56,017 bases of DNA from contig NC_068987.1 in assembly GCF_001194135.2 (NCBI RefSeq), forward strand, positions 4,276,261 through 4,332,277, in the 5' to 3' direction. The translations under genes and the position numbers were made by a program. This document shows positions 2,766 through 44,914 of this stretch, one piece after another. Position 1 is the first letter of the stretch; every line of letters begins with the position of its first letter. The stretch is from Octopus bimaculoides. Its lineage: Eukaryota. Below the pieces are notes generated by a model that was not told the origin of the DNA, did not search any database, and was given only the letters and a program-made list of their open reading frames with translations.

Positions 2766-2986
2766 TGGTCATCTACAACTCATTTTCCTGCGCTGTAAGG
2801 CCCACCTACGTGAAACCGGAAGGTTGTTATCTATCGACAGGATCCAGAAGTCTTACCAAAGTGTGCTATTGCTACGATTACTTATGCAACTCCGCCAACC
2901 TTCTTCGTAGCAACTGGGTGCCATTGTTGCTTCTCTTTCAGCTCCTCGTTATTCTGGCAATAAATCAGATGTGGACACTCGACTAG
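2766..2986 (+). CDS. Ly6-A: terminal coding exon of a Ly6/uPAR three-finger (Quiver/Sleepless-like) GPI-anchored protein; upstream exons not found in the window
   Basis: Pyrimidine tract plus TTTCAG acceptor ending at 2765, phase 1. Translation (x)VIYNSFSCAVRPTYVKPEGCYLSTGSRSLTKVCYCYDYLCNSANLLRSNWVPLLLLFQLLVILAINQMWTLD*. It has five Cys ending in C-x-C-x4-CN followed by a hydrophobic GPI-type tail, the same layout as the last exons of Ly6-B and Ly6-C. Confidence 0.85.
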
Positions 2987-3760
2987 TCGACTAAAAATGA
3001 ACATACGCATACATACACACACACACACACACACACACATGCACATACATGTGTGTGTGTGTGTGTGTATATACATATATATGTATGTATACACATATAT
3101 ACATATGTATGTATGTATATACATAGATATATACATACACATGTACATATAAGTTTCATACACATGCATACATATACATATAAGCCTCATTAACTTATTT
3201 CATACCCACATATTCACACACACACACACACACACACACGTCTACACACACACACACACGTCTACACAGAAATTGGTTGATTCGATGTTTCATATATTTA
3301 CTTACATATTCATATGCATATACACACACATACACATATACACACAAATATATATATATATATATATANNNNNNNNNNNNNNNNNNNNNNNNNNNNNNNN
3401 NNNNNNNNNNNNNNNNNNNNNNNNNNNNNNNNNNNNNNNNNNNNNNNNNNNNNNNNNNNNNNNNNNNNNNNNNNNNNNNNNNNNNNNNNNNNNNNNNNNN
3501 NNNNNNNNNNNNNNNNNNNNNNNNNNNNNNNNNNNNNNNNNNNNNNNNNNNNNNNNNNNNNNNNNNNNNNNNNNNNNNNNNNNNNNNNNNNNNNNNNNNN
3601 NNNNNNNNNNNNNNNNNNNNNNNNNNNNNNNNNNNNNNNNNNNNNNNNNNNNNNNNNNNNNNNNNNNNNNNNNNNNNNNNNNNNNNNNNTATATATATAT
3701 ATATGTATGTATGTATGTACACATATTCAATCGTACATACATACGTACACATATACATAT

Positions 3761-3806
<46 letters not shown>

Positions 3807-3963
3807 CATATCTTCGTACACGATTAAAGCCATGAATCATGAAATTTTGAGGGGAGGGGTAAATGGGAAGTCGTGACCTTTATGCCTTATAAAATCATAG
3901 ACTTGATGACATCTTACTTTCCGCTCTTCGACACTTGTAATAGTTTTAATATTCGCCCATAAT

Positions 3964-4512
3964 GTGTTGTATGTCGGGAGGGTCATTATGTCACTAATAA
4001 ACATGCACTGGTTCTATTTTACTTCTGTATTGTCTATTTTTGTTAGTTTCTTAACTTAGATAATAGAGAAGTGAAATGTAACCAGTGTGTGTGTACTTAT
4101 TATTGGTATAATGACTCTCCCGAGATACAACACTGTAGTAGAAGGAAAGAAAAGGGAAAAAACCGAGCAACGAATACAAAAGGATATTATCAAATGAAAA
4201 AAGTTTGAGAAGCAGTAAATAGTGAGAAAGACAAAAAACATAATAAAGAAGTATCATAGAACCAGTGCATGTGTTTACTATAGCATAATGACCCTCCCGA
4301 GATACACACTATAGCAGAGGAAGCAGACAGAAAAGAATCGAGCAACGAAAACAAAGAGTAATAAGTGAAATGAAGAGAATTTTTAGAAAGCAGTAAGTAG
4401 TAAGAAATACACGCCAAAAAATAAAGAAGTGTAGTAGAACCAGTGCGCGTGTTTATTATAGCAAAATGACCCTCCCAAGAAACAACAGTATAAAAAAGAC
4501 GAGCAACGAAAT
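3964..4512. repeat. Inverted partial copy plus about 2.5 degenerate direct copies of a ~180-bp unit
   Basis: The motif aaccagtg...ataatgaccctccc(g/a)aga(t/a)ac...cgagcaacgaa recurs at about 4080, 4260 and 4438. Its reverse complement lies at 3964-4026. Confidence 0.8.
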
Positions 4513-5282
4513 TTTTCCCAAAGGGTTTTACAGTTGTAAGCCATCTCTGTGTATCAGATATTTGTTGGAAAGACGACGTAATGTAACAAACAGCAACGAT
4601 CTTATGTCTCACTCGTGTATTATTACTTTGTATACAGCTAAATATCTAAGAGTGCAAGCAGGGTTTCTACATGTAACGAATGTTTCTTTATGCTTCTATA
4701 TCTAATCTAATCCTCACTGAATTAAAATTACGATCTGTTTACTGTATTTTAGAGAAGAAAAAGACCACATGCTGAGTTGCCGCATTGTAGTAGCTTAGCT
4801 GTAAACTCATTGGATGTTTTCCGTGGTGTTCTCTTTCTCTTTTTATTATTTGTTAGAATAAGAAAAGAAGAGGCGTATTCAGGTAGTTCTTGAATGAGCG
4901 AGAGGGATAATTGGATAAATCTAATACAGGTAACGATCCATTGGATTCCTGCAAATTTGGATAATTCCAGACTGAATTCCTTGAAAGAAAAGAACAATGA
5001 ATCGGCAGAGGATTTGAGGCAAACATAAAACATCAAGTTTTACGATTTCTATGGCATCTATTTAGAGAAAATAAATGGCCTAGTAGTTAGGGAGTTGCAC
5101 TCGCGATCATACGGTCGTGGTTTCGATACCCGTAAGTTGTGTTCTTGAGTACCAGTTGCGTACTGGGTCGATCTAATCGACTGGCACTCCCTCCCCCAAA
5201 ATGTCGGGCCTTGTGCCTAAAGTAGAAAAGATTATTACTCATTTGTTGTTGTACACTGGGGGACATCACTCGGTTTTGGCCA

Positions 5283-5622
5283 AAGGTGGGCACAATTAAT
5301 CGAAATGTTAACTTCGTTAACCGTTAATCCGTTAACTAAAAAGTTAACTTCGATAACCGTTAATCAGTTAATTCTTTAAAAATCTAACGGAAGTTATCGA
5401 TAAACCGTTAACGTAAATTTTTATTAAAGAAAAAAAAATCAGGTTTTGATCTAAAACCAACTAAAAACATCCTTAAAAAGTGCCAAAATTATAAAATCTA
5501 ACTTCAATTCAATTGAAGTTAACGGAAGTTAACTCAAGGTGACTTGAATTAACGGAAGGTCCGATAATGATTTTCCAAATTTAACGTAAACGTTAAATCG
5601 TTAACGAAAATGTTAACTTGGT
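5283..5622. mobile_element. GTTAAC-rich MITE-like element
   Basis: Starts aaggtgggcacaattaatcgaaatgttaac and carries many GTTAAC/TTAACG subterminal motifs in both orientations at both ends. Confidence 0.5.
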
Positions 5623-5968
5623 TTTGGTGCTAGTAAATATGTTTCTGATCGTATGTTTAACCGTCCAGGGATGACCTACGATTAAACAACAACGACATCA
5701 ACAACAACTCGTATCTGTTATCCAATTCTCGGATAATTACTGCACGGCGGTAGTTTTTATCAGTAGTTAACTTGTTTGTAGAGCGCTAAATATCGGCTGC
5801 TTCTCTGAACACCTGCGTCCAGTATTTTCTTTGTTGTCGGACATATTGTTATCTCCGTACCATGGGGAGAGCCTCAATTGAAAGTTTTTTGCTTGGCAGA
5901 TCTAGACATCATCATAACCATTAACATATTGAATGAGCGCAATTCTTTGTTGCTGTTGCTACTGATGC

Positions 5969-6004
<36 letters not shown>

Positions 6005-6929
6005 CACTGCTGTCATCATTTAACCCCACGCCCACCCAAGTCGGCCTCGATCGAGCAATCCCATAATCAGCCATACATTCCAGCCCTGATTAAGGACGTA
6101 GTTTTATAAATCCAGGCCTGAACCTCTCTCCATACGGTTTCGCTCTTCACTTTTTTTTAATACTGGTATGGCGTAATTGAGATGGAGATTTAGCTACTAT
6201 TTCTACCAAGTCGAACGACCACATAGCGGTTCCCTGGTTAGCTCGTAGAGTTCCTTCCCGACCCCCATATCCCCATATTGCGTTCCAAGGACAACGTAGG
6301 GGGCAATGGCGGTCCTATCGGTTATTGCTGTCATTTAATGCCAGATTAAACCTGATCGATTATCGATTACCCATTATCTCACCTCACCCATCTATTCCTA
6401 AAGTATGGAAACCTACTGCCACTATAACCAACGTGTACTGAACCCGAAACCAAGGAGTTGCAAAACGATCTTCTTAGCCACACAGCCGTATAACGAGAGA
6501 AAAATAAGGAACCTTAAATTATATATATTCATTACTTAGCTTTTGGCACAAAGTGCTCAACCGAAATTTGAGTGGTCGGGGATTCGATTCATGATAACGA
6601 CTTGATGGTCCCTTTCCCACGTCTTCTAAGGATTTCAATCCGATCTTCTAAGATGTTTTCACACCTACCCTGCGTTCCAGACTTCTTTTGTTTTCTGTAA
6701 AATACCATTAAATTACTATTTGGGTCTTTGGGCTTTAATAATGATTTTTCATAACAAACCGTTGTGAGAAATAAGGTTTACAGGTTTCTGGAGATTTGAT
6801 CAGCAGATGGCTTCTAATTTGAATGGGGTTGAAATTTCGTCTGCGCTGTAAGGGAGGGGTTACTCTAACCTTTACTCTAGAGAATCAGTCTAGCACTTTT
6901 TCGTATTCTTAGATACCCACTGGTTTATA

Positions 6930-7188
6930 GGGAAATTGTGTGTGTGTGTGTGTGTGTGTGTTGTAAAGAGATATATTCGTTTTATTTCTATCATCGCTTT
7001 AGATTGTCCTAAATTTTTTTCCTTCAACTTCTGCAGATATTCATACATAAAGACCACGTACATACATACATATATACATACATACATACATAGCATAGCA
7101 TACACACACATATATATATATATGCACACATGTATATATACATACATACATTATATATAGATATGCAAGTATATACTCTCACAGTTTG

Positions 7189-7241
<53 letters not shown>

Positions 7242-7420
7242 CACATATCAAATACACATACATACACGTGTATATGTCCTCATAGTTTGACATACATGCA
7301 TGCATTTACACACACATACACATGTATATACATATATATATATATATATGCATATATATATATATATATATACATACATATATGTATATACATATGCATA
7401 TATATATAAACATATATATA

Positions 7421-12540: not shown

Positions 12541-12560
12541 CTTTATATGGGCGTGGCTCT

Positions 12561-12835
12561 GTGAGTGGAGTTGGTAGACGGAAACTGAAAGAATCACTTT
12601 GTGTATATATGTGTGTGTGTCTTTGTATCCGTGTTTGTACCCCGCCACTGCTTGACAACCGGTGCTGGTATGTTTACGTCTCCATAACTTAGTAGTTGAG
12701 CAAAAAATCCGATAGAATAAATACTGGGCTTTAAAAAAGCAAAAAGGTAAGAACTAGGATCTATTCTTTCGTCTAAAATTCTTCATGGCGGTGCCCCAGC
12801 ATGGCCTAGTCTGTTGACTGAAATAAATAAAAGGA
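12561..12835 (+). mobile_element. SINE family A, partial
   Basis: Shared body and 3' end with the other copies. Confidence 0.75.
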
Positions 12836-19030: not shown

Positions 19031-19665
19031 GTTCAGTAGTTTTATTTTTATAACGTGCTTTCACTTCACTACCGAGCGCAGCTCTGTGCGCCTTGGGTAT
19101 GTGCTGTGGTNNNNNNNNNNNNNNNNNNNNNNNNNNNNNNNNNNNNNNNNNNNNNNNNNNNNNNNNNNNNNNNNNNNNNNNNNNNNNNNNNNNNNNNNNN
19201 NNNNNNNNAGTGTTTTGCGTAGGATGTGTGCTGTGCCCAGTAGTGCAATTTTCTGTATGTTATATATATTTGTAAGTCCTGGTGTTTTTGTTATGTATTT
19301 GTCTGAATATTTTTTTATTATACCTAAGGCACCTACTATAATAGGAATTGTTTCTGTTTTTAGATTCCACATTCGAGTTACCTCTATTTCCAGGTCTTTG
19401 TATTTTGAAAGTTTTTCCATTTCTTTTAGAGAGACGTTGTCATCTGCTGGTATTGATACATCAATTAGAAAGCATTTTTTTTCTTCATGATCTTTGACAA
19501 CTATATCTGGTCTATTTGCCTTAATTTCTCTATCTGTGTGTATTGGCATATCCCAGAGTATGGTTGCTTTCTCGTTTTCTGTGACTTTTTCTGGCGTGTG
19601 TTTATACCATCTTTTTTCTGTTGTTATTCCATAGTGTTGGCATAGCTTCCAGTGTATATAGGTCC
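19031..19665 (-). mobile_element. R4/Dong-type LINE 3' part (RLE domain plus 3' UTR), ending in an (AAT)n tail
   Basis: IHWKLCQHYG...ILWDMPIHTDREIKANRPDIVVKDHEEKKCFLIDVSIPADDNVSLKEMEKLSKYKDLEIEVTRMW...IPIIVGALG...IQKIALLGTAHILRK. Tail at 18989-19030. Confidence 0.9.
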
Positions 19666-23230: not shown

Positions 23231-23279
23231 ATGTCGACCAGTTTGAAGTTTTTACTCATCGTACTTCTGATAAACAGAG
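23231..23279 (+). CDS. Ly6-B exon 1 (signal peptide MSTSLKFLLIVLLINR)
   Basis: ATG at 23231 after AAAA, hydrophobic 16-codon stretch, and donor AG|GTGAGT at 23280. The phase-1 end matches the exon 2 acceptor and gives ...INR-AFA-LTCHMC. It is too short for the ORF track. Confidence 0.75.
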
Positions 23280-24310
23280 GTGAGTTATTTATAACCTAGA
23301 TTATACTTTATTTGGTGAAACGTGGGATAACTAATATATTGAAAGTTACTATAACATTATGTGAAGTTATATGATGTATATGGGAATTAATATATGGTAA
23401 ATTTGAACCTCGTCTTCTAACATAAATTTGAATTTAGAAGCGTGTTTATGTGAAAAGGAAGACGAATTCTGACCCCACTTAAACGGAAGACGTCTTTGTG
23501 TGTGTGCGTATATATATATATATATATATATATATAATCAAGAGAGAGAGAGAGAGAGATGAGACTTTATAGCCATCATAAAACTTATCCAGAATGCCTA
23601 TTTGGCATAACTACATAGTTATGCCTATTTTTTACTTATAATTTGTTTGTAAATAAAGTCAATTGGTTGTCAAATCGTTCATTTTCTCCTGTAGTGGAGA
23701 TACAACAAACGGCAAAAATATTTTTAACAGCGTAAAATATTCATTGTCACCTTTTAAAAAATACTTTCATATATCTATTTATTTTGTCGCAGCAAGAACT
23801 TTTCACACTGAAGGAGTATCTTAAAACGAAAGCAAACAAATGTTTTTGAAATGAACCTCAACATGTTTTAGATAACTGTTATTATAATTTCCCTTCCTTT
23901 AAGTAAAAACTGACAAGCTCTGCCTAACATTAAATTACAATGTATACATTAAAAGCGAGTAAATCTTTCCAAAGGTTACTCGTGGTTTAATTCCGTTAAC
24001 TTCGGACATCGGCGTATTATAGTGACCTAGTTGAGCTACTTAGCTGTTTATGAGTTAACTTCTCTGGCTGAGAGAAAGACCAAATTCAAATGCTGCTGTT
24101 TGCTTCACTCATAGGTTCTGTGTCTTTCCGGTTAAGCTTTAGTTTCTGAATCGGAAGATCACGATTGCCAGAGTCGCAGACGTTTCTCGCCAAACATTCG
24201 CAAAAACCAAAAACGAAAAAAATGGCCGTGCATCGAAGTTGTTTATAAAATATTGCAATACGTGGTAGATACCAAAAGTAGAGTTTATTAAGAATACTAA
24301 CCTAACTGGT

Positions 24311-24820
24311 ACAAGCGTGGAAGAAGTTTTCTTCTCAACCACATGTTTGCAAGTTCAATCCCACTGTGTGGCACCTTGAGCAAGTGTTTTCTACTATAGC
24401 CTCAGGTCAATCAGAGCCTTGTGAGTGGATTTGGTGGACGCAAACTGAAGGAAGACCGTCGTAGATATGTGTGTTTGTCCCACCCACTAGCGTAGGGGGT
24501 GGCCAGGGGGGGTTCCGTCCTGGGGGAGCACTTTTAAAGGGGCACCACTTTTGGATCTGCTGTTGGCAATTTGTGTTTTTTGTGGGGTCCAGGGGGCCGC
24601 CCCGGACAGCACATACTCTCACTACGCTAGTGGTCCCACCACCACTTAACAATCAGTGTTGGTGTGTTTACATCCCCGTAACTTAGCAGTTTGGCAAAAG
24701 TGATGATAAAATAAGTACTAGGCTTAAAGGAAAAAATATAAGGACTGGGGTCGATTCGTTCAACTAAAAAAACCTCTTCTAGGCAGTGCTCCAGCATGGT
24801 CATGGTCTAAAGATGAAAGG
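24311..24820 (+). mobile_element. SINE family A interrupted by the hAT MITE
   Basis: The SINE body resumes in register after the TSD at 24640. Confidence 0.8.
24485..24632. mobile_element. hAT-type MITE (148 bp) with 11-bp TIRs and 8-bp TSD, inserted in a SINE
   Basis: TIRs CACTAGCGTAG / CTACGCTAGTG. The flanking direct repeat GTCCCACC lies at 24477-24484 and 24633-24640. Confidence 0.85.
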
Positions 24821-24869
24821 TAACAAAATTAACATCAGTCAATCAACGTCCTGAAAAGAAACCTAATTA

Positions 24870-25260
24870 TGTCTTAGTCTTCATATCTCATGGGTTGTGG
24901 TGAACATCCATCACCTTCTTCTTCCCACTTCATGCCAGATGGCACCTGAGGCTTCCACTCTCTCCCTCTCTTTCTCTCCAGGTTGCCCAGGTGATGACTG
25001 GGATTTGCACCTGGTTCTCTCTTTTCCATCTGCCAGACTGTCCCTCTCTTTTCCAATAGTTCTTCCCTAAATGTTCTTGGGTCTTCTCCACTTCCTCCTT
25101 CCATCCAGAGGCCATACCATCACTGTAATACAGCCTTGGAATCTTATAATGTGGCCAATGTGCTTCCAGCTTCTTCTCCATCCTTCGCTGCTCGTGCTCT
25201 CCATCCCAATTCTCTCAAACACAAGTGTTGGAAAAAATTCTTTGCTGCTAAAGTTCTTCT
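24870..25260 (-). mobile_element. RTE-clade LINE 3' ORF remnant
   Basis: RRSWKHIGHIIR...WPLDGRRKWRRPKNI matches RTE 'W.GH..R...W.P.GKR..GRP..TW'. Confidence 0.65.
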
Positions 25261-26600
25261 GATTCATTACATTCTGAGTTCAAATTCTGTTGAGGTCAAT
25301 TTTACCATTCATCCTTTCAGGGTCAATGAAAATAGATACCAGTTGGATATTGGGGTTGACTTTGCCTTTCATCCTTTTAGGTATCATTAAAATAAGTACC
25401 TGTTGCATATTGGGGTCAATGTAATCAACTTATCATTGACTTCTTTTATGCAGAGTTTTTTTCAATGATTCTGCTTCTTTATTCAGAAACACTGTAAGAG
25501 AACTGAAACACCATGTCTTTCTTTAGCCCTAGGATCCATAAGTCCATCTACCTGGTTTCCATGGCATGTAAGCAACTGAGAGCACAACCATCCACCTTGA
25601 TCTGGTTGCCAGTCCGTTACAGGGTTCAAGATCAGGAGTTTCAGATGGGAGGGGATGGGTCGATTACATTGACCCCAGTACTTGAGTGCTATTTTATTTT
25701 ATCAACCCTGAAAGGATGAAAAGCAAGGTTGACCTCAGCATTATTTGAACTCAGAAAAATAAAGAACTGGAAGAAATGTCACTAAGAATGTTGTCCAATA
25801 TACTAACAATTCTGCCATTTCACCACCTTATGGAACCTTGCATTCACAGATTCAAAATCTTTCCCCATGGCTGTAGCAGTCACCAAAATAAAGCTACTTC
25901 GCTTTATCACGGTGTATTGCCTTCAGTATTCTAGCTTTGTACTTTGTATCTCTCAGAATATTCTGTAACCACAATATAACCATTTTACTTCTTATCAGTT
26001 TAACACAACATTAAACATAACCTTTTTCTCTCTAAGAAATCCTCTACATGTTTAAGAAACTTCCTGAAATGGTATTGGTGTCTGATAAATATCTGGAATT
26101 AATGCTTCAAATACAGATTTGCATTCTTCTACACAAATCACTGTTTGAAAACCAAAATGGAATCTCAGCTATGAGAAATCAAAGGTTTGATGGAAGCTTT
26201 TCAAAAGAATGCTGACTACACTAGACTAAAGAATGGCTCCATATTCCTGCAGTTGGGTGATTGTTGATTTCAGTTCTACACTGAGTTTTTGTTTCCAGTT
26301 GCAGAATCAGTGCCATTATTTCCAAAGCAAAAACTATCACTGAACAATGGTACTGCCTACTTAATTTCAAGCTTTTTGATTTTTACAGAGCTTCAGAATT
26401 GTTCCTAGTCATAAGCATGGTTGCATATGTAAGAAGTTCATTTCACAACACCATGGTTTCAGGTTCATTCCCTCTGCATGGCAACATGAACAAGTGTCTT
26501 CTATTACAGGCTTGAACTAGTCAATGACTTGTAGGAGAAATCGGCCGATGGAAGCAATACACAAGCCTATCACATATATACATATACATAAGTATATGTA

Positions 26601-26990
26601 GGCGTGGCTGTGTGGTAAGTAGCTTGCTACCCAACCACATGGTTCCGAGTTCAGTCCCACTGCATGGCACCTTGGGCAAGTGTCTTCTACTATAGCCTCG
26701 GACCAACCAAAGCCTTGTGAGTGAATTTGGTAGACGGAAACTGAAAGAAGCCCATCATATATATGTATATATATGTGTGTGTGTCTGTGTTTGTCCCCCC
26801 AACATCGCTTGACAACCGATGGTGGTGTGTTTACGTCCCCGTAACTTAGTGGTTTGGCAAAAGAGACCGATAGAATATGTACTAGGCTTACAAAGAATAA
26901 GTCCTGGAGTCGATTTGCTTGACTAAAGGCAGTGCTCCAGCATGGCCGCAGTCAAATGACTGAAACAAGTAAAAGTGAGAGTAAAAAGAG
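26601..26990 (+). mobile_element. SINE family A, near full length
   Basis: tRNA-like head ggcgtggctgtgtggtaag...ggttccgagttcagtccc plus body and 3' end. Confidence 0.9.
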
Positions 26991-27364
26991 CATATCTGTA
27001 CTTTTGCTTCAAAATAAAGTGAAATTTTTTGTGCTGAGGAAGAGAAATAAGCTGTTTTACTATTTCAATCTTGAAATTGGACCAACACCCAATTGACTGC
27101 AGTTTTATTTTGTATTTTTCATTTGCTCATCTACAAGCAAAGTCCCAGGGTCGATATGCTCAACTAAAGGCGGTGCTCCAGCATGGCCGCAGTCAAAAGA
27201 TTGAAACAAGTAAAAAAAAAAATGGGAATCTGTATATTTGCAGGAGCTACAGGTGGTTTTATAATGTTTTTTGGGGAATATTCTTACATGTTGCAGAAGG
27301 ATTTTTTCCTGTTCCCTTATATAATTATATGGTTTATATACATTTTCTTTTCTTTTATTCTTTA

Positions 27365-27573
27365 TTTTTTTCTTTTACTTGTTTCAGTCATTTGACTGTG
27401 GCCATGCTGTAGCACCACTTTTAGTTGAGCAAATCGACCCCAGGACTTATTCTTTGTAAGCCTGGTGCTTGTTCTATCAGTCGCTGTTTGCCAAACTGCT
27501 ATGTTACGGGAATGTAAACACACCACCATCGGATGTCAAGTGATGTTGGGGGGGGGGGACAGACACATAAACA

Positions 27574-27621
<48 letters not shown>

Positions 27622-27845
27622 ATGTGTGTGTGTCAGTGTTTGTCCCCCACTACACTGCTTGACAACTGGTGTTGGTGTCTTTTCCCTTCTGTGACTTAGC
27701 AGTTTCACAAAAGAGATCGATGGAGTAAGTACAAGGTCTTAAAGAAAGACTATTGGAGCTGATTTGTCTGACTAAAATATTTCAAAGCAATGTTCCAGCA
27801 TGGCCACGGTCTAACGACTAAAACAAGTCAGAAGATAAAAAGAAA
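27365..27845. mobile_element. Two SINE family A 3' halves in opposite orientation sharing a (CA)n core
   Basis: Minus-strand half at about 27365-27545 and plus-strand half at about 27630-27845. Confidence 0.7.
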
Positions 27846-27864
27846 AAGGATGGTGATAATAAGT

Positions 27865-27905
<41 letters not shown>

Positions 27906-28032
27906 GTATTTAGGGAGATTAGAGATTATGAGGAGAAGAGATAATACATATTGATTAAATGGTATTATCATAAATTAATAATTCTAACAGAATCAGGTCA
28001 ACGAAGATCCTTTCTACATGATAATCACCTAT

Positions 28033-28247
28033 TTAACCTTTTCGATACCAACCTGATTGAAACTGCGTCTGGCTCTTTGTTTTCATAAGTTTTGAATTAA
28101 AATATTCCACCAAACCAAAGTCACAATTTATGTTCCTAACACTAGCTGAATGATAGCTAAGTTGTTTTATTAAATTCTTTGTTATATTTAAAGTAATTGA
28201 AAGAAACACGGAGCATCTCAACAGAAATATGGTAACAAAAGGGTTAA
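28033..28247. mobile_element. piggyBac-type MITE, copy 1
   Basis: TTAA-CC(T)TTTCGATACCA ... TGGTAACAAAAGGG-TTAA termini. Confidence 0.7.
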
Positions 28248-28270
28248 AATATATAATAGAGAAACAATTC

Positions 28271-28500
28271 TTAACCCTTTCAATACCAACCCTGCTGAAA
28301 CCACCTCTGGCTCTGTAGAACAAATGTCTTGTTTTCATAAGTTCTGAATTAAAATCTTCCACCAAACCTTAGTCACAATTTATGTTCCTAACATTAGCTT
28401 AATTATAATGAAGTTATTTTACTAAATTCTTTGTTATATTTAAAATTAATTGAAAGAAACTCAGAGCATCTCAACAGAAATACAGTAACGAAAGGGTTAA
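28271..28500. mobile_element. piggyBac-type MITE, copy 2 (a degraded third copy lies at about 31640-31865)
   Basis: TTAA-CCCTTT ... AAAGGG-TTAA, with the internal sequence colinear with copy 1. Confidence 0.75.
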
Positions 28501-28607
28501 TCCTTTTTTTTTAGATTTGGACTGGAATATGTTATAATATATGATTGCTGTTTTTGTTTATTTATCTTTTTATTTATTTATCTTTTTAAATGTTTTCTCT
28601 TCTGCAG

Positions 28608-28775
28608 CATTTGCCCTTACCTGTCATATGTGTACCACCCTTGGAACATCAGATTGTTTAGATAAGTTCATTGAATCACAGAGTGGTGATTGTGAGGAAG
28701 GAGAAAACAAATGTGTCAAATACAAGACTTATGCTGAAATGCGTGACACTGGATCTATGTGGTCTAAAAACACAG
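28608..28775 (+). CDS. Ly6-B exon 2 (Cys1-5 of the three-finger domain)
   Basis: Acceptor ttttctcttctgcag ends at 28607 and donor AG|GTTAGT starts at 28776. The exon is 168 nt, phase 1-1, and reads AFALTCHMCTTLGTSDCLDKFIESQSGDCEEGENKCVKYKTYAEMRDTGSMWSKNT. Confidence 0.9.
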
Positions 28776-29557
28776 GTTAGTAGTTCATTTTCTCTTTCCC
28801 CCCACCCCCCACTGCCACCACCATCCCCACCCTGTGAAGGCACGTGGCCTAGTGGTTAACCTTTAGCATGCTGTAGATGCATCATGTCACTGTGAGAGTT
28901 CTCTCCCCTACAGCATCAGGAGTCATTGTGTCACATTGAGTGCATTTTCTTTTTTGAGCAAAACACTTCATTTTAAATTATTCCAATTCACTCAGTTGTA
29001 AACAATTTACGAGCAACACCTGTATTAGTGACAGGTGCAAAACATCTGTGATTCTTACTCATCTCATCAGATAAAATGAGAACCCAAATCATTGAACCTG
29101 ATACTCTAAATTATGAATGAATGTCACCAAATCCTGATTGCTTGTTATATGGAAATCTAACAGAACAGCTTCACAGGATCCCTTTACTCCCTGGTGGACG
29201 CATTGACCATTCCTGGTCTGTCATCTTCAAGTCAGATGATTACAATAACTGATGTCTGTCAAAGAATTCTGAAAAAATTGCAACTTTAGGTGCAGGCATG
29301 GTTCTGTGGTAAGAAGTTAGCTTCCCAACCACAAGGTTCCAAGTTCAGTCCTACTGTGTGGACCTTGGGCAAGTGTTTTCAGCTATAGTCTTGGGCCAAC
29401 TAATGGTAACCATTTAGAGCCTGTTAAATAAAATTAAAACTGTTCTTATAAAAAAATAAACTCTTCCTATGTATGGTGAGTTTTGAATCCCCCTGTACAT
29501 ACATATATACATACATACATATTATATATACATTCATTTTCGTTTTTATATTTACAG

Positions 29558-29751
29558 TGGTATCCGCTGTAACCCGAGGATGTTTACAAACTGATGAAAA
29601 GGATTCATGCACCAGAACCATCATACATGGTGGTTACCATGACCGCTGTATTTGCAGCGGTGATGACTGCAATGCTGCCTCTGCCAAATCTACCAATTTC
29701 TTTCTCCTCTTTATCTCCACTGTGACTTTATTGCTACAGTTTCTCATCTGA
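29558..29751 (+). CDS. Ly6-B exon 3 (Cys6-10 plus GPI signal); full protein 136 aa
   Basis: Acceptor tttacag ends at 29557. Reads [64 protein letters not shown]. Joined CDS is 49+168+194=411 nt, in frame, with 10 Cys. AATAAA at 30207-30212. Confidence 0.9.
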
Positions 29752-35559: not shown

Positions 35560-35940
35560 TATGTATATATGTATGTATGTATTTGTGTGTCTTGGTGTTT
35601 GTTCCCTACCACCTCTTGCAAACCGGTGTCAGCTAGTTCACATCCCTCTAGCCTAGCAGTTCATCAAAAATGACTGATAAAATAAATAACAGACTTGATA
35701 TAATACTGGAGTCGATTTGTTAAATTAACCTTTCAAGGCGGTGCCCCAGCATGGCCACAGTCCAATGACTGAAACAAGTAAAAGATGAAAATTGCAGCTA
35801 ACTACTCCAAGGCTGTGGAGTGGTTCCGGGTTCAGTCCCACTGCGTGGCACCTAGGGCAAGTGTCTTCTCCTATAGCCTCGGACCGACCAAAGCCTTGTG
35901 AGTGGATTTGGTAGATGGAAAGAAATCCTTTGTATATTTA

Positions 35941-36006
<66 letters not shown>

Positions 36007-36799: not shown

Positions 36800-37700
36800 A
36801 TGTGGCTGTGTGGTAAGTAGCTTGCTTACCAACCTCATGGTTCCAGGTTCAGTCCTACTGTGTGGCACCCTGGGCAAAAGAGACCGATAGAATAAGTACT
36901 AGGCTTACGAAGAATAAGTCCTGGGGGTTGATTTGTTTGACTAAAGGCGGTGCTCCAGCATGGCCACAGTCAAATGACTGAAACAAATAAAAGAAAGAAA
37001 GAAAGAAAAAATAAAAGCATCACCAAATATACCTTTATTTAGTTTCACTTATTTGACAGCAGCCATGCTGGAGCAACAGCCTTGAAGGGTTGCTCCTTGA
37101 AGGGTTGCCCTTCAAGTAAAATGACTTAACCTCTTTTGCTGAACTGCTAAGAGGAAACAAACAAACCAACACTGGTCATCAAGTGTGGTGGTGGGGAGCA
37201 AACACAAACACTGGTACTCCATTAGTTACAGTGACGAGTATCCCAATTGATCCGCTCAATGGAACAGCCTCCTCGTAAAATTAACATGCAAGTGGCTGAG
37301 TACTCCACAGACACACGTATACCCTTAACGTAGTTCTGAGGGAAATTCAGTGACGAGGCTGGTCCTTTTGGATTAGAGGTACAATTCATTTTTGCCAGCT
37401 GAGTGGACTGGAGTAATGTGAAATAAAGTGTCTTGCTCAAGGACACAATGTGCCACCAGGTATTGAACTCACAGTCTAATGATCATGAGTTGAATACCAG
37501 TAACCACTTAGCCACATGTTAACACACACACACATATATACGATGGACTTCTTTCAGTTTCCATCTGCCAATTCCACTCACAAGGCTTTGGTCGGCCCGA
37601 AGCTATAATAGAAGACACTTGCCCAAGGTGCCAAGCAGTGGGACTGAACCCAGAACCATGTGGTTGGTAAGCAAGATACTTACCACACAGCCACTCCTAC
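36800..37700. mobile_element. SINE cluster (family A + at 36800-37010; family A - at 37020-37210 and 37540-37700; another SINE - at about 37300-37520)
   Basis: Shared SINE blocks in both orientations. Confidence 0.7.
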
Positions 37701-39109
37701 GCCTATTTATATGATTTTTTTTCATTTCATGTTTATTTCATTCAATGTTTGCAATGTTCTTTCTCCCCCCCCCTCTCTCTCTCACACACACTGTCTCTGT
37801 AATATAAACACACACACACTCCAGTTATGATTTCGTTATTACACAAATATTGCATTAGAATTTTGCAATTCAACAAAGGGCATTCAAAAAAATATGCAAC
37901 TGAAAAAGCTTTTTTGCACACTAAACGTACTTGCACTACCTTGATGTTTATTCAACAAGAGAGATTATGATTATGATGAAATAATGAAAGTAATATTTAC
38001 TAAGCAAGCAAACACTATTATACAAAAAAATAATTAGACGTAAAACATAAAAATTATTAGTATTGGAAATCAAATATGAAAATATTATCAAGGGGTTAGC
38101 AGAAGCCTAGAGGGCAATCTTTCTCCTAGTATATGTAATGATTAAATTCTATATCATGTTCTTTGTGTTCTGTTATGCACATGATTCCTTGGTTTGCAGA
38201 AAAATTTGTCTTTCATGAAACCATTCCATGGTGCAAAAAATGTTGGGGTCTGCTGCCCCAGAGAACATTAATTATAAAGGAGATAATTATATTTTCATAA
38301 TATTTGGCAGGATTAGAAGCTTGAATTAGAAATTAAGGAATAAAGAAAAAGATTCATAGAATACACAGCTTTAAATTTTTTTCTTTTTCTTTTGTTGTTA
38401 TTTACTTATTACAAAGTTCTTAAAATTTCTGGTCAGCTGTAAACCAGCTCCTGAGTTCAATGGACATAATACTCACAACTCTACTAAATTTAGAGAAATT
38501 TCAAAACAAAAATATATTGAGAAAATATAAGGGTTTTTTTTTTTATTTTTGAAAAGAGAAAGAATAAAAGTATAGTATGTCAAATATATTATCATACAAA
38601 ATTTCTTTTTACAAATTAGAAAATGACAGAAATTCAATAATGAAATTACATTTCTTCCTTTTTTTTTTCTTTTTTTGCTTTAAAAAATTTCCTAAAATGT
38701 TTAAACATAGTATATATTACATGTATACATAAGACAGACACATTTTACATGACAACGATAAATTAGACATTTTAAACACGCATAATAGCTATATATATAT
38801 TTATATATATGGTGTGTGTGATGTATNNNNNNNNNNNNNNNNNNNNNNNNNNNNNNNNNNNNNNNNNNNNNNNNNNNNNNNNNNNNNNNNNNNNNNNNNN
38901 NNNNNNNNNNNNNNNNNNNNNNNNNNNNNNNNNNNNNNNNNNNNNNNNNNNNNNNNNNNNNNNNNNNNNNNNNNNNNNNNNNNNNNNNNNNNNNNNNNNN
39001 NNNNNNNNNNNNNNNNNNNNNNNNNNNNNNNNNNNNNNNNNNNNNNNNNNNNNNNNNNNNNNNNNNNNNNNNNNNNNNNNNNNNNNNNNNNNNNNNNNNN
39101 NNNNNNNNC

Positions 39110-39865: not shown

Positions 39866-40131
39866 TTAATGTAGAACCAAAAGAAGTGTGAGGGAAACAG
39901 AAATTAGTTTCAAAAGAGTGAATCCCTGTAGTGGAGTTGCAGTATTGCAGCCATTCCAGTCTTTACAGAAACAATACTGAATTGAAGAATCTGTTAACAC
40001 TGATGGGTTGCGAGGATCGTTTTTCCGTGCAGGCTCACAGTATCCATGGCGTCTCAAAACTGGCATCATCAATCGATGGCGGACATTCTTATCCAATTCA
40101 TGTTCGCATTCACGAATGATTTTATATTCAC
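39866..40131 (-). CDS. Ly6-C exon 3 (Cys6-10 plus GPI signal); full protein 154 aa
   Basis: Minus-strand acceptor TTTCAG before 40131. Reads SEYKIIRECEHELDKNVRHRLMMPVLRRHGYCEPARKNDPRNPSVLTDSSIQYCFCKDWNGCNTATPLQGFTLLKLISVSLTLLLVLH*, with a CxC...CN motif then a hydrophobic tail. Confidence 0.92.
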
Positions 40132-40408
40132 CTGAAACAAAGTAAAAAACATTACAAAACACAATTATATAATTGTTTAACGTATTAACATTTCTATTAG
40201 CCATATCTGGCCCAAATATTCTTCCTGTTTTATGTTAAAAAGGCCAGATCTGGCTTCTCGTACCAAACCTACAATGTCTGGGAACATTTTGATTCCACCT
40301 CATGCATCTGATAGAGTAATCTGAAGAATGGTGAAGGATTAAAGTTAAAAAAAAACAATGAAAAATTTTGATTGTAAATATGTGCAGTATGTGTGTGTGT
40401 ATGTGTGT

Positions 40409-40440
<32 letters not shown>

Positions 40441-40506
40441 ATTGTTGGATTGTTTGCCAACATAACATGACAGTCCTGGTTTAGGACGAAGGAGACATCA
40501 TCTCCA

Positions 40507-40727
40507 GCTGGCTATACAACACAATCTGTGTCCTTATATTTTCGAACAAGGGAATCTAGCACCCCGCACTCAGCTCAAAACAATATCTCTAGCCAAACAA
40601 TTATTCTGTGCTGATGAAGGTAAATAACCCAGAAATCGCGATACACAGATATTGTTTTGAGCTGAGTGGGGGTGCTATATTCTCTTGTTCAAAAATATAA
40701 GGACACAGATTGTGTCGTATAGCCGGC
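40507..40727. mobile_element. Fold-back element: about 80-bp inverted arms around a hammerhead motif (Ly6-C intron 2)
   Basis: 40507-40588 is the reverse complement of 40647-40727 with only a few mismatches. Confidence 0.75.
40606..40649 (+). ncRNA. Minimal type I hammerhead ribozyme-like motif
   Basis: ctgtg-CTGATGA-a-ggt(aaata)acc-ca-GAAA-tcgcga-TA-cacag. The core is canonical, stem I pairs, and stem III is the palindrome ATCGCGAT. The stem II junction is non-canonical because of extra unpaired nucleotides. Confidence 0.6.
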
Positions 40728-40915
40728 TATAATAGGAGACACTAATAGAAGACCAAGGTAGCACACAGTGAAACTGAACCCACAACCATCTGGTTCCAAA
40801 TCAAGTTTCTTACCAAACAGTCACCCCTGCCCTTACAACTGGACATAGAAAGAAAATAATAATTGTAATTCATTCACAGAATGTGAAAACATAGAAAGGA
40901 ATGCCGTAGACTTAC

Positions 40916-41047
40916 TTCCAACTTTTTCCATAACTTTGACACAAAACTCGGAGTTAGGGCAAGACCGCCACGGATACATTCGCCAGTTAACATCGTAGCC
41001 ACAACCACCCATGGCACTGTAGCAGCGATGGCACATTATGGCATCAG
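40916..41047 (-). CDS. Ly6-C exon 2 (Cys1-5)
   Basis: Acceptor cacctttcag and donor A|GTAAGT (40915-40910). The exon is 132 nt, phase 1-1, and reads TDAIMCHRCYSAMGGCGYDVNWRMYPWRSCPNSEFCVKVMEKVG. Confidence 0.9.
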
Positions 41048-42049
41048 CTGAAAGGTGATCAAGAAAGAAACAGTTAATGAGAAGAAAGAAAAAAAAAAAA
41101 CAGTAATCTTCATAAGATTCAGACATAAATCACAAAAATGTCATTATCCTTGTCATCACACGATATCCCTCTTCCATGCTAGCAGAGGTTGGTTTGACAG
41201 GAACTGGAAAAAAAATGAAAGAACTGCATCAAACTCCAGGCTCTTCTGTGGAATGGTTTCTATGGCTGGATGCCCTTCTTAGTGCCAACCACTTTACAGA
41301 GTGTGCTAGGTGATTTTTAAGTGGCACCAACACCTGTGAGGTTGCCAAGTAATTCACAAGACAAGCCATCAACTGCAGGGCTGGGTAGGATTGAAAGAGG
41401 TAGCTTTATGTCAGGTGATGAGAGGTTAAACTATGATAGAAAAACAGACACAGGTATCTTGCTATAGATGAGATACATGGTTATCTCAGGTGGAAAAGAA
41501 AAGATCATTTGATGCTTATTTTTTGAAGTTTTGTGTTGCCTTCCAATATCCACTTAGATGTCTTTAAATTCAAAACCCAATGAATTATTATTTTTTACTG
41601 GCTTAACCAGATAAGAAATGGTAGCACCCTGTAGCTCTTTTTACAAAGTCTTTAAGAATGGTCAGAGAACAAAGTTTTGTCAGACCAAAGACTTGGCTTA
41701 AGTGCTTGTAAAAGATTGTTTGATGCACCATGTAACATTGTTAGATACTAAAACATTAGAAAACACCATTAAATCAAGTGTTTTGCTTGCCTTGTGGTTC
41801 AAAAATATAATACACTTAATACCGTCCCATCCCTGTACAATTGTACAAGGTTTAACAGAGTGAATAGCCACCATAACAGAACGCTGGGGTATGTAAGGGT
41901 ATCCGTGTACCACTCACAAGTGTTTAGTTGACCTTGGGTTATAATAGAAGACACTTGCTCATGGTGCTAAGCAGTGGGACTGAATCCAAGATTACATTGT
42001 TGGGAAGCAAGATTTTCATCTCTTACCAAGGGGACCTAATCAACAACAG

Positions 42050-42210
42050 TGCAGGCTGGCCAATGTTTAAGGGTGCTACTTTCTCCATTGAGGGAAGCCA
42101 GACTGTATGCTGCCTGTGTATGAACTTCAATGCTACATGGTAGTGAGACATGGGCCCTGAATGCAGAGTACTTGCAAAGGGTAGAAAGAAATGAAGCAAG
42201 CATGCTCCAT
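42050..42210 (+). mobile_element. RTE LINE remnant
   Basis: MLHGSETWALNAEYLQRVERNEASML motif. Confidence 0.7.
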
Positions 42211-42479
42211 CAGAGTCGTCTCAGCAGCATAATAGGTTTCCAGGCAAATCAGTGTACTGGGCCCTCAACTATTTATTTCTTGACAGCAAATCACAGCATC
42301 CATAGACTAGAATTGAACCCCTAGACCCATGCAACCCCTCTGAGAAACTACCCAGTCTGCCCATGCCTGAAACCACACTGTGCTCCATTAGATGTGCAAT
42401 GTTTGTGTGTAGCATCCAATATTTTGGTGCCAAACTAAGAAATTATTAAGAATGCGAAGATGGCTGGAACAGGAACTCA

Positions 42480-42860
42480 ATTCTTTCGGTTAAGAAGCTT
42501 GCTTTGCAACCATGTGGTTTCAGGTTCAAATCCATGTGTGACTCCTTTGGAAAGTGTCTTCTACTATAGCCTAGGGTTGATCAATGCTTTGTGAGTGAAT
42601 ATGATAGACGGAAACTGTGCAGAAGCCTGGATTATATAGGTATATACATCTGTGAGTGAGTGAGTGAGTGTCATTGAGTTTGTCCCCTTCACAACATTCA
42701 ACTGATGTTGGTTTGTTTACATTCTCATAGCTTGATAGTTTGGTAACGAGGTCAATAGAAGACTTATAAGCAATGGGGTTGACTTTTTCACCTAAATGAT
42801 TCAAAGTGGTGCCCCAGCATGGCCACAATCCAATGAGTGAAACAAGAAAAGATAAAGACA
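42480..42860 (+). mobile_element. SINE family A, diverged
   Basis: gtgtcttctactatagcc...gacggaaactg...ggtgccccagcatggccac. Confidence 0.7.
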
Positions 42861-43087
42861 CTATCAAATGTTGGAAAATATCAATTTGTATTATATACCT
42901 CATCGATTCAGCCACCTTAATGCTTTCCAAAACGATCCGGTTTCACAGAATTAAAAAGGAATTGTTTAATGGTTTAAACACACACAGGTCACAGTATATC
43001 TATTTGTGTAAGTCGTCAAAGAGTCCATAAGTCAGGGGAAAAAATGCCCTGTCAATAGCGTGGGTAGATTATCCAAAATGTATGGTG

Positions 43088-43242
43088 TTATATATCCATT
43101 ACGACCGGTCTTACCAATCGGTTTCGTGCTAGGAATTCAACGGAGTGTTAGCGCAGGGTTACATAATCGAATTGTTGAATTCAACTCCGTTGAATCCCTA
43201 ATGCAAAACCGAGTGGTAAGATCGGCTGTAATGGATATATAA
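43088..43242. mobile_element. Fold-back hairpin with about 59-bp arms (Ly6-C intron 1)
   Basis: 43088-43146 versus the reverse complement of 43184-43242, with a 37-nt loop. No hammerhead core seen. Confidence 0.65.
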
Positions 43243-43257
43243 TACTGTACACTTCAG

Positions 43258-43292
<35 letters not shown>

Positions 43293-44847
43293 NNNNNNNN
43301 NNNNNNNNNNNNNNNNNNNNNNNNNNNNNNNNNNNNNNNNNNNNNNNNNNNNNNNNNNNNNNNNNNNNNNNNNNNNNNNNNNNNNNNNNNNNNNNNNNNN
43401 NNNNNNNNNNNNNNNNNNNNNNNNNNNNNNNNNNNNNNNNNNNNNNNNNNNNNNNNNNNNNNNNNNNNNNNNNNNNNNNNNNNNNNNNNNNNNNNNNNNN
43501 NNNNNNNNNNNNNNNNNNNNNNNNNNNNNNNNNNNNNNNNNNNNNNNNNNNNNNNNNNNNNNNNNNNNNNNNNNNNNNNNNNNNNNNNNNNNNNNNNNNN
43601 NNNNNNNNNATATAATGATGGTAGAGTGACATCGGGGAAATTCAGTTGCTATTTCTATCAGGTCGAATGCCCACATTACGGCTCCCAGAAATTTATTCGT
43701 TGGAAGCTGACGGTCACTCGCGAAGTTTTTCGGGGAACAAAAATACATAAAACCAACTTGGAAAGGTAGACATTGAAATAAATCAATACTGTCATGTTTC
43801 CATAGGCAAATATGGCCTCGATATTTATTCATATGAGACAGTAAAAAGCAATCAAAATAGTTGTTAACTTTCAGTATGTATTACTGCGAACAGCTAATTA
43901 TGTAGTTTATTAGCCTGAAGAATGTGGCTATCATAACTGGCAGGGGAGTCTTTTATTGTTTACATAAAATGTGGAATGCAACAAGTTTCAGTGAAATCAA
44001 CCCGTCACAAACACAACAGAAAACAAGGCTAAACTTTATGAAATCAGGACGTTTTAATCTTCTTAAATTATTAGCTAAAGAAGAAAAGAAAAACAAAAAA
44101 CGAACAAATATTAATGATGATGATTTATCGACGAGGGCCCAAGATATTGAGGACAACATCAAAAGAGGAAATATGAACACAAAAGGGTGGGGTTTACACG
44201 GCTCAAAAAGGAAAACAACAACAATAAAGATATAACAAATAATAACAGAAATAAAATTCTGAAAGGTGCAAAAATGAATAAACAGAACCTCCATTGGATA
44301 ATTTCGGGGAATAAAATTAACCACAAAACAGTAAGTAAAAATAGGACATTTAGTGTACTTTTTGGTGTTAATTTTTTTTCTTAACTGATATACTAAATTT
44401 AGAGAAACCAAAATTAATATACATATATAGTGTTTGTGTATATATAGTCTTGGCTAAAAGGTCAAAAATTTAGCAAGCTTTGTAGATATAATAAACTTCG
44501 TAGTCCATCATAGTATTGTAACAAAAACATTCAACCTCATTATATTTTCTTTATAATACACCATACAGTCGTTTTTTTTTTAGTGTATATAGGTCACAGT
44601 TTTAAAAAACACACATTTGACCATTTCATGTTGAAAAAGGAACAAAAAAAAAAGGAATATAAACATCAAAGAAAAAGCATTTATCATTTTTTTAACTTAA
44701 TACCTATCATACTATTATACATGCCTTAAGTTAATCTAATTAATCAGAGGAGATATAAGATAGGTATAACTAATTATACGTATATGCGTGTGATTAAGTT
44801 AATGAATATTTTTAAGGTGGTTTAAATAAGAAGATAGATTCACTTAC

Positions 44848-44914
44848 TGTATTTAATAGACACTGTTATGAAGATCAAAATAACCAAGAGCTGGTAAGAT
44901 CTTAAGGGAGACAT
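44848..44914 (-). CDS. Ly6-C exon 1 (signal peptide MSPLRSYQLLVILIFITVSIKY)
   Basis: ATG at 44914, 22 codons with a hydrophobic core, and a consensus donor A|GTAAGT (44847-44842), phase 1. Joined CDS is 67+132+266=465 nt in frame with 10 Cys. Not in the ORF track. Confidence 0.8.

What the first reader, a model, noticed from the sequence alone, without database searches (positions are those of the whole stretch)
2766..44914. Cluster of three highly divergent Ly6/three-finger GPI-anchored protein genes
Seen: three genes within 42 kb (+, +, -), two fully reconstructable and fragmented or missed by the ORF track. Each complete gene has signal exon / Cys1-5 exon / Cys6-10+GPI exon with phase-1 introns, and there is almost no shared sequence beyond the Cys scaffold. 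Established: this exon layout matches vertebrate Ly6/CD59/three-finger toxin genes. The C-x-C...CN end is the invertebrate Quiver/Sleepless type. Sleepless modulates Shaker channels and nAChRs, Lynx1 modulates nAChRs, and other fly Ly6 proteins build septate junctions. Inference: if this is an octopus, which has expanded nAChR-derived chemotactile receptors, the cluster is a candidate set of accessory or modulatory subunits, or a reservoir for toxin-like recruitment.
Basis: partly seen in the sequence, partly recalled or inferred. Interest (0 to 1): 0.75.

Follow-up and report, generated by a model that had tools for sequence, protein, structure and literature searches.

The report
Ancient three-gene Ly6/Quiver cluster in octopus
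The window, from Octopus bimaculoides, does hold three small Ly6/Quiver-type cell-surface protein genes, but they are old, slowly evolving genes found in the same arrangement in chitons, snails and mussels, so they are an ordinary conserved cluster and not an octopus novelty.

Summary
The window is Octopus bimaculoides chromosome CM046607.1.

- **G2** (+, 23231-29751) and **G3** (-, 39866-44914) each have three coding exons with phase-1 introns.
- Their products are identical to RefSeq XP_014777241.1 and XP_014777225.1, and both pass Pfam QVR (33.3 and 31.9 bits; cut-off 27.3).
- **G1** is present only as its last exon (2766-2986). Its earlier exons lie upstream of the window.
- No assembly gap touches an exon. 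One gap lies in G3 intron 1, and its flanks are collinear in gap-free O. sinensis.

The three paralogues share 8-17% non-cysteine identity because the duplications are ancient, not because the genes evolve fast.

- Each gene has its own orthologue across molluscs.
- The chiton Liolophura has the same order and orientation (G1+, G2+, G3-).
- Pomacea and Sinanodonta keep the G1-G2 tandem, with G3 about 60 kb away.
- G3 is 50-60% identical across molluscan classes.
- Against O. sinensis, dN/dS is 0.07 for G3 and 0.18 for G2.

This does not fit an octopus-specific set of chemotactile-receptor accessory subunits or a toxin reservoir. Expression could not be tested. What is new is modest: G1 is unannotated, and the microsynteny runs deep.

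The parts
2766..2986 (+). G1, last coding exon only: Cys6-10, CN, predicted GPI-signal tail and TAG stop. It enters in phase 1. Exons 1-2 lie upstream of the window.
   Evidence: The sequence was read directly. No exon 2 is present in 1-2765. The first 19 residues are identical to part of the O. vulgaris model CAI9725104.1, which also carries the G1 Cys1-5 exon. Orthologous exons sit immediately upstream of the G2 orthologue in Pomacea, Sinanodonta and Liolophura. No annotated protein contains this exon.
23231..23279 (+). G2 exon 1: ATG and signal peptide MSTSLKFLLIVLLINR, ending in phase 1 with donor gtgagt.
   Evidence: It matches XP_014777241.1 exactly.
28608..28775 (+). G2 exon 2: end of the signal peptide (AFA|L) and Cys1-5, with phase 1 at both ends.
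   Evidence: AG/GT are conserved in O. sinensis.
29558..29751 (+). G2 exon 3: Cys6-10 (C-x-C...CN), predicted omega region NAA, a 17-residue hydrophobic tail and a TGA stop.
   Evidence: The spliced exon 2-3 junction is seen in RNA-type contigs of a related cephalopod.
44848..44914 (-). G3 exon 1: ATG at 44914 and signal peptide MSPLRSYQLLVILIFITVSIKY, ending in phase 1 with donor gtaagt.
   Evidence: It matches XP_014777225.1 exactly.
43293..43609 (.). Assembly gap inside G3 intron 1. This is the only gap inside a gene.
   Evidence: The flanks 40725-43209 and 43613-46034 map collinearly to O. sinensis L002 13992-11428 and 11208-8903, with no gap there.
40916..41047 (-). G3 exon 2: signal cleavage region (TDA|I) and Cys1-5, with phase 1 at both ends.
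39866..40131 (-). G3 exon 3: Cys6-10, a conserved basic stretch RHRLMMPVLRRHGYC, C-x-C...CN, a hydrophobic tail and a TAA stop.

Best explanation
The locus is an ancient, conserved cluster of three paralogous single-domain Ly6/uPAR genes of the Quiver (QVR) type in Octopus bimaculoides.

**Protein product (inferred from sequence).** Each gene encodes a signal peptide, one ten-cysteine three-finger (LU) domain, and a C-terminal small-residue site plus hydrophobic tail of the kind that is replaced by a GPI anchor. The mature proteins would therefore sit on the outer face of the plasma membrane. As in other family members, they would act by binding other membrane or extracellular proteins through their loops.

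**Age of the cluster (shown).**
- The three genes arose by duplication before the last common ancestor of living molluscs.
- They have been kept since as three separate 1:1 orthologue lines.
- In chiton and octopus they still lie in the same order and orientation.
- They are under purifying selection, extreme for G3.

**Function (inferred, not shown).**
- The conservation pattern matches the 'hard-wired' invertebrate Ly6 genes, not lineage-specific or toxin-like ones. The hard-wired genes serve basic cell-biological tasks: in Drosophila, septate-junction assembly by bou, cold, crok and crim; chitin-matrix organisation by rtv; and Shaker and nAChR modulation by qvr.
- NCBI labels point to crim for the G3 line and rtv for the G2 line. 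I treat these as leads only.
For: **Identity.**
- Exact match to two RefSeq O. bimaculoides proteins. L003, the fetched stretch of CM046607.1 (GCA_001194135.2), is identical to window 13231-39751.
- Pfam QVR is above its gathering score for G2 and G3, matching the full model 1-86.
- The G1 composite matches the full QVR model at E = 0.003.
- The canonical LU gene structure is present (PMC6600238).

**Orthologue lines.**
- G3 has 35 hits, at 50-63% identity, in bivalves, gastropods and a chiton, all 150-155 aa.
- The G2 profile finds molluscan proteins sharing CVKYKT...DSG...VVTRGC...C-x-C-S-x-D-x-CN, in Solemya, Haliotis, Ostrea, Dreissena, Pecten, Pomacea, Sinanodonta and Liolophura, plus a nemertean.
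- G1-type exons were found by tblastn in Pomacea, Sinanodonta and Liolophura.
- A neighbour-joining tree recovers three monophyletic groups with bootstrap 85.5, 61 and 69.5.

**Synteny.**
- Liolophura CM072725.1 has G1(+), G2(+), G3(-) within about 35 kb.
- Pomacea and Sinanodonta have G1 then G2 in tandem, with G3 about 60 kb away.
- O. sinensis has G2 and G3 tail-to-tail, as in the window.

**Selection.**
- dS is about 0.3 against O. sinensis.
- Omega is 0.18 for G2 (0.12 in the LU domain) and 0.07 for G3 (0.013 in the LU domain).
- The G1 exon is 19/19 identical to O. vulgaris.
Against: - Fold predictions are only moderate (pLDDT 66-67), and Foldseek gave no significant match. Three-finger proteins (TGF-beta-family receptor ectodomains, snake toxins, Lynx1, uPAR) do figure among the top or highest-probability hits.
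- The GPI anchor and signal cleavage were judged by eye only, because no predictor was available.
- G1 is incomplete in the window, unannotated in O. bimaculoides and O. sinensis, and scores below the QVR cut-off (19 against 27.3 bits).
- Bootstrap support for the G1 and G2 groups is modest.
- No expression or partner data exist.
- The crim and rtv links rest on names given by NCBI to other species' proteins, not on a test made here.
Confidence: 0.8

Rival explanations
1. The cluster supplies accessory or modulatory subunits for octopus chemotactile receptors (nAChR-derived), evolving together with that octopus innovation.
For: The genes belong to the QVR family. The founding member of that family, and Lynx1, modulate nAChRs and Kv channels (PMC4735452 and PMC6502960, listed). 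The organism is an octopus.
Against: - All three genes predate cephalopods and are kept 1:1 in chiton, gastropods and bivalves. That chemotactile receptors are a cephalopod-specific expansion is my own background knowledge, not tested here.
- There are no extra copies in the window.
- Strong purifying selection gives no sign of co-evolution with a new receptor family.
- No paper in the searched library links Ly6 proteins with chemotactile receptors.
Confidence: 0.07
2. At least one of the three acts like Drosophila Quiver/Sleepless or mammalian Lynx1. That is, it is a neuronal, GPI-anchored, cis-acting modulator of conserved Shaker-type K+ channels and/or ordinary nAChRs. This would be an ancestral role, not an octopus-specific one.
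For: QVR is the best Pfam match. UniProt's automatic names are 'Protein quiver' and 'Protein sleepless'. High conservation fits a conserved partner.
Against: The Pfam QVR family covers most invertebrate Ly6 proteins, whatever their function. NCBI names for orthologues point to crim and rtv, not qvr. Orthology to qvr was not tested.
Confidence: 0.25
3. The cluster is a reservoir for toxin-like recruitment: secreted three-finger toxins for the salivary gland.
For: Only the shared fold with snake three-finger toxins. Some toxins appear among the weak Foldseek hits.
Against: All three keep a C-terminal hydrophobic anchor signal. Omega is 0.07-0.18, not accelerated. The genes are single-copy and conserved across non-venomous molluscs.
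Confidence: 0.02
4. G1 is not a working gene but a relic exon or pseudogene, so the window holds two real genes, not three.
For: No annotated protein contains the exon. Exons 1-2 are not in the window. The composite scores below the QVR cut-off. The only model that includes it is a chimeric O. vulgaris prediction spanning 135 kb.
Against: - The 73-codon frame is intact, with a strong polypyrimidine-AG acceptor and the correct phase.
- It is 19/19 identical to O. vulgaris, although dS is about 0.3 between O. bimaculoides and O. sinensis, a close relative of O. vulgaris.
- O. vulgaris has a matching Cys1-5 exon.
- Annotated orthologues of 140-157 aa lie at the syntenic position in three other molluscs.
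Confidence: 0.1

Closest known systems
Drosophila 'hard-wired' Ly6 genes: crimpled, coiled, crooked and boudin (septate junctions), and retroactive (chitin matrix)
   Same: They are single LU domains with ten Cys, a C-terminal CN and a membrane anchor. Paralogues differ in almost everything but the cysteines, yet each has well-conserved orthologues across a whole class or phylum (PMC3058042). Some lie in small clusters with a conserved exon structure (PMC4476152). NCBI names G3 orthologues 'crim-like' and a G2 orthologue 'rtv-like'.
   Different: Orthology to any fly gene was not tested here. The molluscan trio is kept as one microsyntenic block. The function in molluscs is unknown.
Drosophila Quiver/Sleepless (Pfam PF17064 founder)
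   Same: It is the best Pfam family for these genes, with the same C-x-C...CN ending and a GPI-type tail.
   Different: Family membership does not establish orthology. There is no evidence of Shaker or nAChR modulation here.
Vertebrate Ly6/uPAR genes (CD59, Lynx1, Ly6 clusters) and snake three-finger toxins
   Same: They share the three-exon layout with phase-1 introns, an intron at the tip of loop 2, and clustering of paralogues (PMC6600238). Three-finger structures appear among the weak fold matches.
   Different: UPAR_LY6 scores only 14.4 bits, below its cut-off. Cys8 and Cys9 are separated by one residue instead of adjacent (my own knowledge of the CC form in CD59; read directly). Unlike toxins, these genes are anchored and slowly evolving.

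Membership tests
Ly6/uPAR (LU, three-finger) superfamily | Ten-cysteine pattern ending in C-N | tested here: met
   G2 and G3 have exactly 10 Cys between C-x-x-C and CN. The G1 exon has Cys6-10 plus CN, and the O. vulgaris exon supplies Cys1-5.
Ly6/uPAR (LU, three-finger) superfamily | Three coding exons (signal, then the LU domain split in two), phase-1 introns, and an intron between Cys5 and Cys6 | tested here: met
   compared with PMC6600238. The same structure is seen in the chiton and Pomacea G1 orthologues.
Ly6/uPAR (LU, three-finger) superfamily | Three-finger beta fold | tested here: inconclusive
   AF2 pLDDT is 66.1 and 66.7, with beta strands in the expected core. Foldseek found nothing at E <= 0.001. 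Three-finger proteins (TbRII, BMPRII, AMHR2, MT7, cobratoxin, Lynx1, uPAR, C4.4A) are among the best hits.
Ly6/uPAR (LU, three-finger) superfamily | N-terminal signal peptide and C-terminal GPI-attachment signal | not testable with these tools
   By eye only. Signal cleavage would fall at AFA|L and TDA|I. The omega candidate is the N of CN, with Ala at omega+2, followed by 13-18 hydrophobic residues. AF2 predicts terminal helices. No signal-peptide or GPI predictor was on hand.
Pfam QVR (PF17064) | HMM score at or above the gathering score of 27.3 bits | tested here: met
   G2 scores 33.3 bits and G3 31.9 bits, both matching model positions 1-86 of 86. The G1 composite (O. vulgaris exon 2 plus window exon 3) scores 19.0 bits, E = 0.003, over the full model length but below the cut-off.
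Orthologue of Drosophila qvr, crim or rtv | Reciprocal best hit or a phylogenetic grouping with the fly gene | not tested
The only evidence is source names: 'crim-like' (Littorina, Liolophura), 'rtv-like' (Argopecten), and UniProt 'quiver/sleepless'.
Secreted three-finger toxins | Loss of the membrane anchor, plus accelerated, duplicative evolution | tested here: not met
   A hydrophobic C-terminal tail is present in all three. Omega is 0.07-0.18. The genes are single-copy 1:1 orthologues.

The most novel reading that the evidence does not exclude
The three Ly6/QVR genes have stayed neighbours, in the same order and orientation in chiton and octopus, since before the molluscan classes split. 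The novel reading is that they are functionally coupled: they share regulatory elements and/or act non-redundantly in one cell-surface complex. This would resemble the way four unrelated-looking fly Ly6 proteins are all needed for septate junctions. If so, this would be the first defined Ly6 orthologue set and conserved Ly6 synteny block in Lophotrochozoa.
Probability: 0.3. Interest if true: 0.45.

Novelty: new member of a known kind. Interest (0 to 1): 0.3.

Why it matters
Ly6 proteins diverge so fast that orthology is usually untraceable beyond a class. Here three lines can be followed across Mollusca by sequence plus synteny, and G3 is unusually conserved (about 66% non-Cys identity across classes). 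That gives a clean entry point for asking what invertebrate Ly6 proteins do outside insects, for example in septate junctions, chitinous matrices or channel modulation.

It also flags an unannotated octopus gene (G1) and a chimeric O. vulgaris model. It removes these genes as prime candidates for an octopus-specific chemotactile-receptor accessory role. Apart from that, this is an ordinary family cluster.

Tried and rejected
- **G1 exon protein search.** A word-index protein search with the G1 exon alone found nothing. The link came later through a cluster mate of G2.
- **O. vulgaris locus.** It could not be fetched because the gene range is 135 kb. The O. sinensis locus reaches only 10 kb upstream of G2 and does not contain G1. 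G1 exons 1-2 of O. bimaculoides therefore remain unseen.
- **Structure.** PDB sequence searches with the G2 and G3 profiles gave no usable hit. The Foldseek results were not significant.
- **Literature.** Searches for the LOC and XP identifiers, for Ly6 with octopus or cephalopod, for Ly6 in molluscs, and for Ly6 with chemotactile receptors found nothing relevant.
- **Recent gene conversion.** The near-equal lengths of intron 2 (782 and 784 nt) suggested recent gene conversion between G2 and G3. The introns share no similarity, so I rejected this.
- **Further LU exons.** I looked for more LU exons in the window and found none.
- **Coordinate errors.** My first-pass exon ends for G2 exon 2 and G3 exon 2 were off by 1-2 nt. 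They were corrected.

Full report
**What the window is.** The 56 kb window is AT-rich eukaryotic DNA (about 37% GC) with eleven N-gaps and many microsatellites. L003 is a 26,521-bp stretch of Octopus bimaculoides chromosome CM046607.1 (GCA_001194135.2), fetched. It is identical to window 13231-39751, which places the window start near position 4,276,261.

**Checking the observation.** A six-frame scan for cysteine-rich open stretches and for the patterns C-x-x-C... and C-x-C...CN-tail-stop picked out exactly two Cys1-5 exons and three Cys6-10 exons. I read the DNA at these places and searched for phase-1 signal exons. This gave the following models.
- **G2 (+):** 23231-23279, 28608-28775, 29558-29751; 136 aa.
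- **G3 (-):** 44914-44848, 41047-40916, 40131-39866; 154 aa.
- **G1 (+):** only the last exon, 2766-2986.

All introns are GT-AG and phase 1. The domain-splitting intron lies between Cys5 and Cys6. My first coordinates for two exon ends were off by 1-2 nt and were corrected.

The spliced translations of G2 and G3 are exact matches to RefSeq XP_014777241.1 (LOC106874138) and XP_014777225.1 (LOC106874124). O. sinensis keeps AG and GT at every boundary. Intron-free contigs of about 1 kb from several sequencing runs of related species encode the G3 orthologue as one uninterrupted CDS, and the G2 orthologue with exons 2 and 3 joined. An HMM scan of all open stretches found no further LU exon in the window.

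**Gaps.** No gap touches an exon.
- Five gaps lie between G1 and G2.
- Two lie between G2 and G3.
- One (43293-43609) lies in G3 intron 1.
- For the gaps at 33633 and 43293, the two flanks map collinearly, on the same strand and at similar spacing, to gap-free O. sinensis DNA.
- The five G1-G2 gaps could not be checked this way, because the O. sinensis locus reaches only 10 kb upstream of G2.

**Family.** G2 and G3 match Pfam QVR (PF17064) over the whole model, at 33.3 and 31.9 bits against a cut-off of 27.3. UPAR_LY6 scores only 14.4 bits. The gene layout is the one described as typical of LU genes: three exons, phase-1 introns, an intron at the tip of loop 2, and frequent small clusters (PMC6600238).

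AlphaFold models are of moderate confidence (pLDDT 66-67). Foldseek gave no significant hit. Three-finger proteins are prominent among the best matches: TGF-beta-family receptor ectodomains, muscarinic toxin, cobratoxin, Lynx1, uPAR and C4.4A. I rate the fold test inconclusive. The signal peptides and GPI-type tails were judged by eye only.

**G1.** The G1 exon alone finds no annotated protein. However, the O. vulgaris model CAI9725104.1, a cluster mate of G2, is a chimera. It contains:
- a Cys1-5 exon (LTCYECNRFRGSVLDTCAEDGHLQRKMKGCYACLKVHTRMEMHDYWNRPK);
- then 19 residues identical to the start of the window's G1 exon;
- then G2 exons 2-3.

So G1 has an upstream Cys1-5 exon in a congener, and G1 lies upstream of G2 on the same strand there too. 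Nineteen unchanged residues, at a synonymous divergence of about 0.3, argue for constraint; this step is inference. A composite of the O. vulgaris exon and the window exon aligns to the whole QVR model at E = 0.003, below the cut-off.

**Relatives elsewhere.**
- G3 has 35 close relatives of 150-155 aa, at 50-63% identity, in bivalves, gastropods and a chiton.
- A full HMMER search with an octopod G2 profile found 38 proteins. The best are molluscan proteins sharing a clear motif set, plus a nemertean.
- tblastn with the G1 composite found matching exon pairs immediately upstream of the G2 orthologue in Pomacea and Liolophura, and a matching last exon in Sinanodonta, with the same phase-1 junctions.
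- A neighbour-joining tree of LU domains recovers three groups, each with cephalopod, gastropod and chiton members, and bivalve members too for G2 and G3. Bootstrap support is 85.5, 61 and 69.5.
- Non-Cys identity is 8-17% between the octopus paralogues. Within lines it is 66% (G3), 33% (G2) and 27% (G1).

**Synteny.**
- In the chiton Liolophura sinensis the three genes lie G1(+), G2(+), G3(-) within about 35 kb, exactly as in the window.
- In Pomacea and Sinanodonta, G1 and G2 are tandem neighbours and G3 is about 60 kb away on the same chromosome.
- O. sinensis has G2 and G3 tail-to-tail.

The cluster therefore predates the split of the living molluscan classes.

**Selection.** Against O. 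sinensis, dS is about 0.3. Omega is 0.18 for G2 (0.12 in the LU domain) and 0.07 for G3 (0.013 in the LU domain).

**Interpretation.** The three genes are old paralogues kept as 1:1 orthologue lines under purifying selection. This is the pattern of the 'hard-wired' insect Ly6 genes. Those genes differ from one another in nearly everything but the cysteines, yet are conserved across insects, and they serve septate junctions, chitin matrix or channel modulation (PMC3058042; PMC4476152).

NCBI names some G3 orthologues 'crim-like' and a G2 orthologue 'rtv-like'. UniProt's 'quiver/sleepless' names appear to be family-level labels; that is my reading of them, not something tested here. None of these links was tested here.

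The genes predate cephalopods, are not expanded, keep anchor tails and evolve slowly. A general QVR-like action on conserved channels remains possible. No paper in the searchable library treats these genes, or Ly6 proteins in cephalopods or molluscs.

**Verdict.** This is a real and correctly read gene cluster of a known kind. Two of the three genes are already annotated. The modest new points are the unannotated G1, the chimeric O. vulgaris model, and the deep conservation of the three-gene block. Interest is 0.3.

Noticed in passing
window 51718-52785 (-): An intact 355-aa single-exon ORF matches Pfam Gal-3-O_sulfotr (PF06990) at 203.7 bits. It is a galactose-3-O-sulfotransferase-like gene beyond the G3 end of the cluster.
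   Followed up: partly
window, e.g. 2174-2622, 12560-12833, 24317-24818, 26571-26995, 27372-27843, 35564-35951, 37532-37700, 48236-48581: An interspersed SINE-like repeat of about 400 bp is present in at least 22 copies or fragments, including inside G1 intron 2 and G2 intron 1. Many copies also occur in the O. sinensis loci. Its translated 'CPRCHAVGLNP' stretch produces false cysteine-pattern hits.
   Followed up: partly
window 734-1099 (+) and 19061-19549 (-): Two mutually similar ORF fragments (…DIVVKD…LIDVSIP.D.NV…KY..L..E..RMW…GALG…) look like remnants of a transposable-element protein. They have no Pfam hit. The second is interrupted by the gap at 19111-19208.
   Followed up: no
O. vulgaris protein CAI9725104.1 (P0041), GCA_951406725.2: This annotated 206-aa 'Protein quiver' is a chimera of G1 (the Cys1-5 exon and the start of the last exon, using an internal GT) and G2 exons 2-3. 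The gene range is 135 kb. It is either an annotation artefact or a read-through transcript.
   Followed up: partly
window 28776-29557 and 40132-40915: Intron 2 is almost the same length in G2 (782 nt) and G3 (784 nt), but the two introns share no detectable similarity. This is probably coincidence.
   Followed up: yes
window gaps at 38827-39108 and 43293-43609: These two gaps lie inside the finding's span but were not in the list added by the scan's program. The second is the only gap inside a gene, in G3 intron 1.
   Followed up: yes
G3 residues about 76-104 (window 40131-39866 exon): The G3 line carries a long, nearly invariant basic insert between Cys6 and Cys7 (E..L.K..RHRL.MP.LRRHGYC.PARKND). 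AF2 predicts it as partly helical, and it makes the domain unusually long for an LU domain (102 aa between the first and last Cys). Its role is unknown.
   Followed up: no
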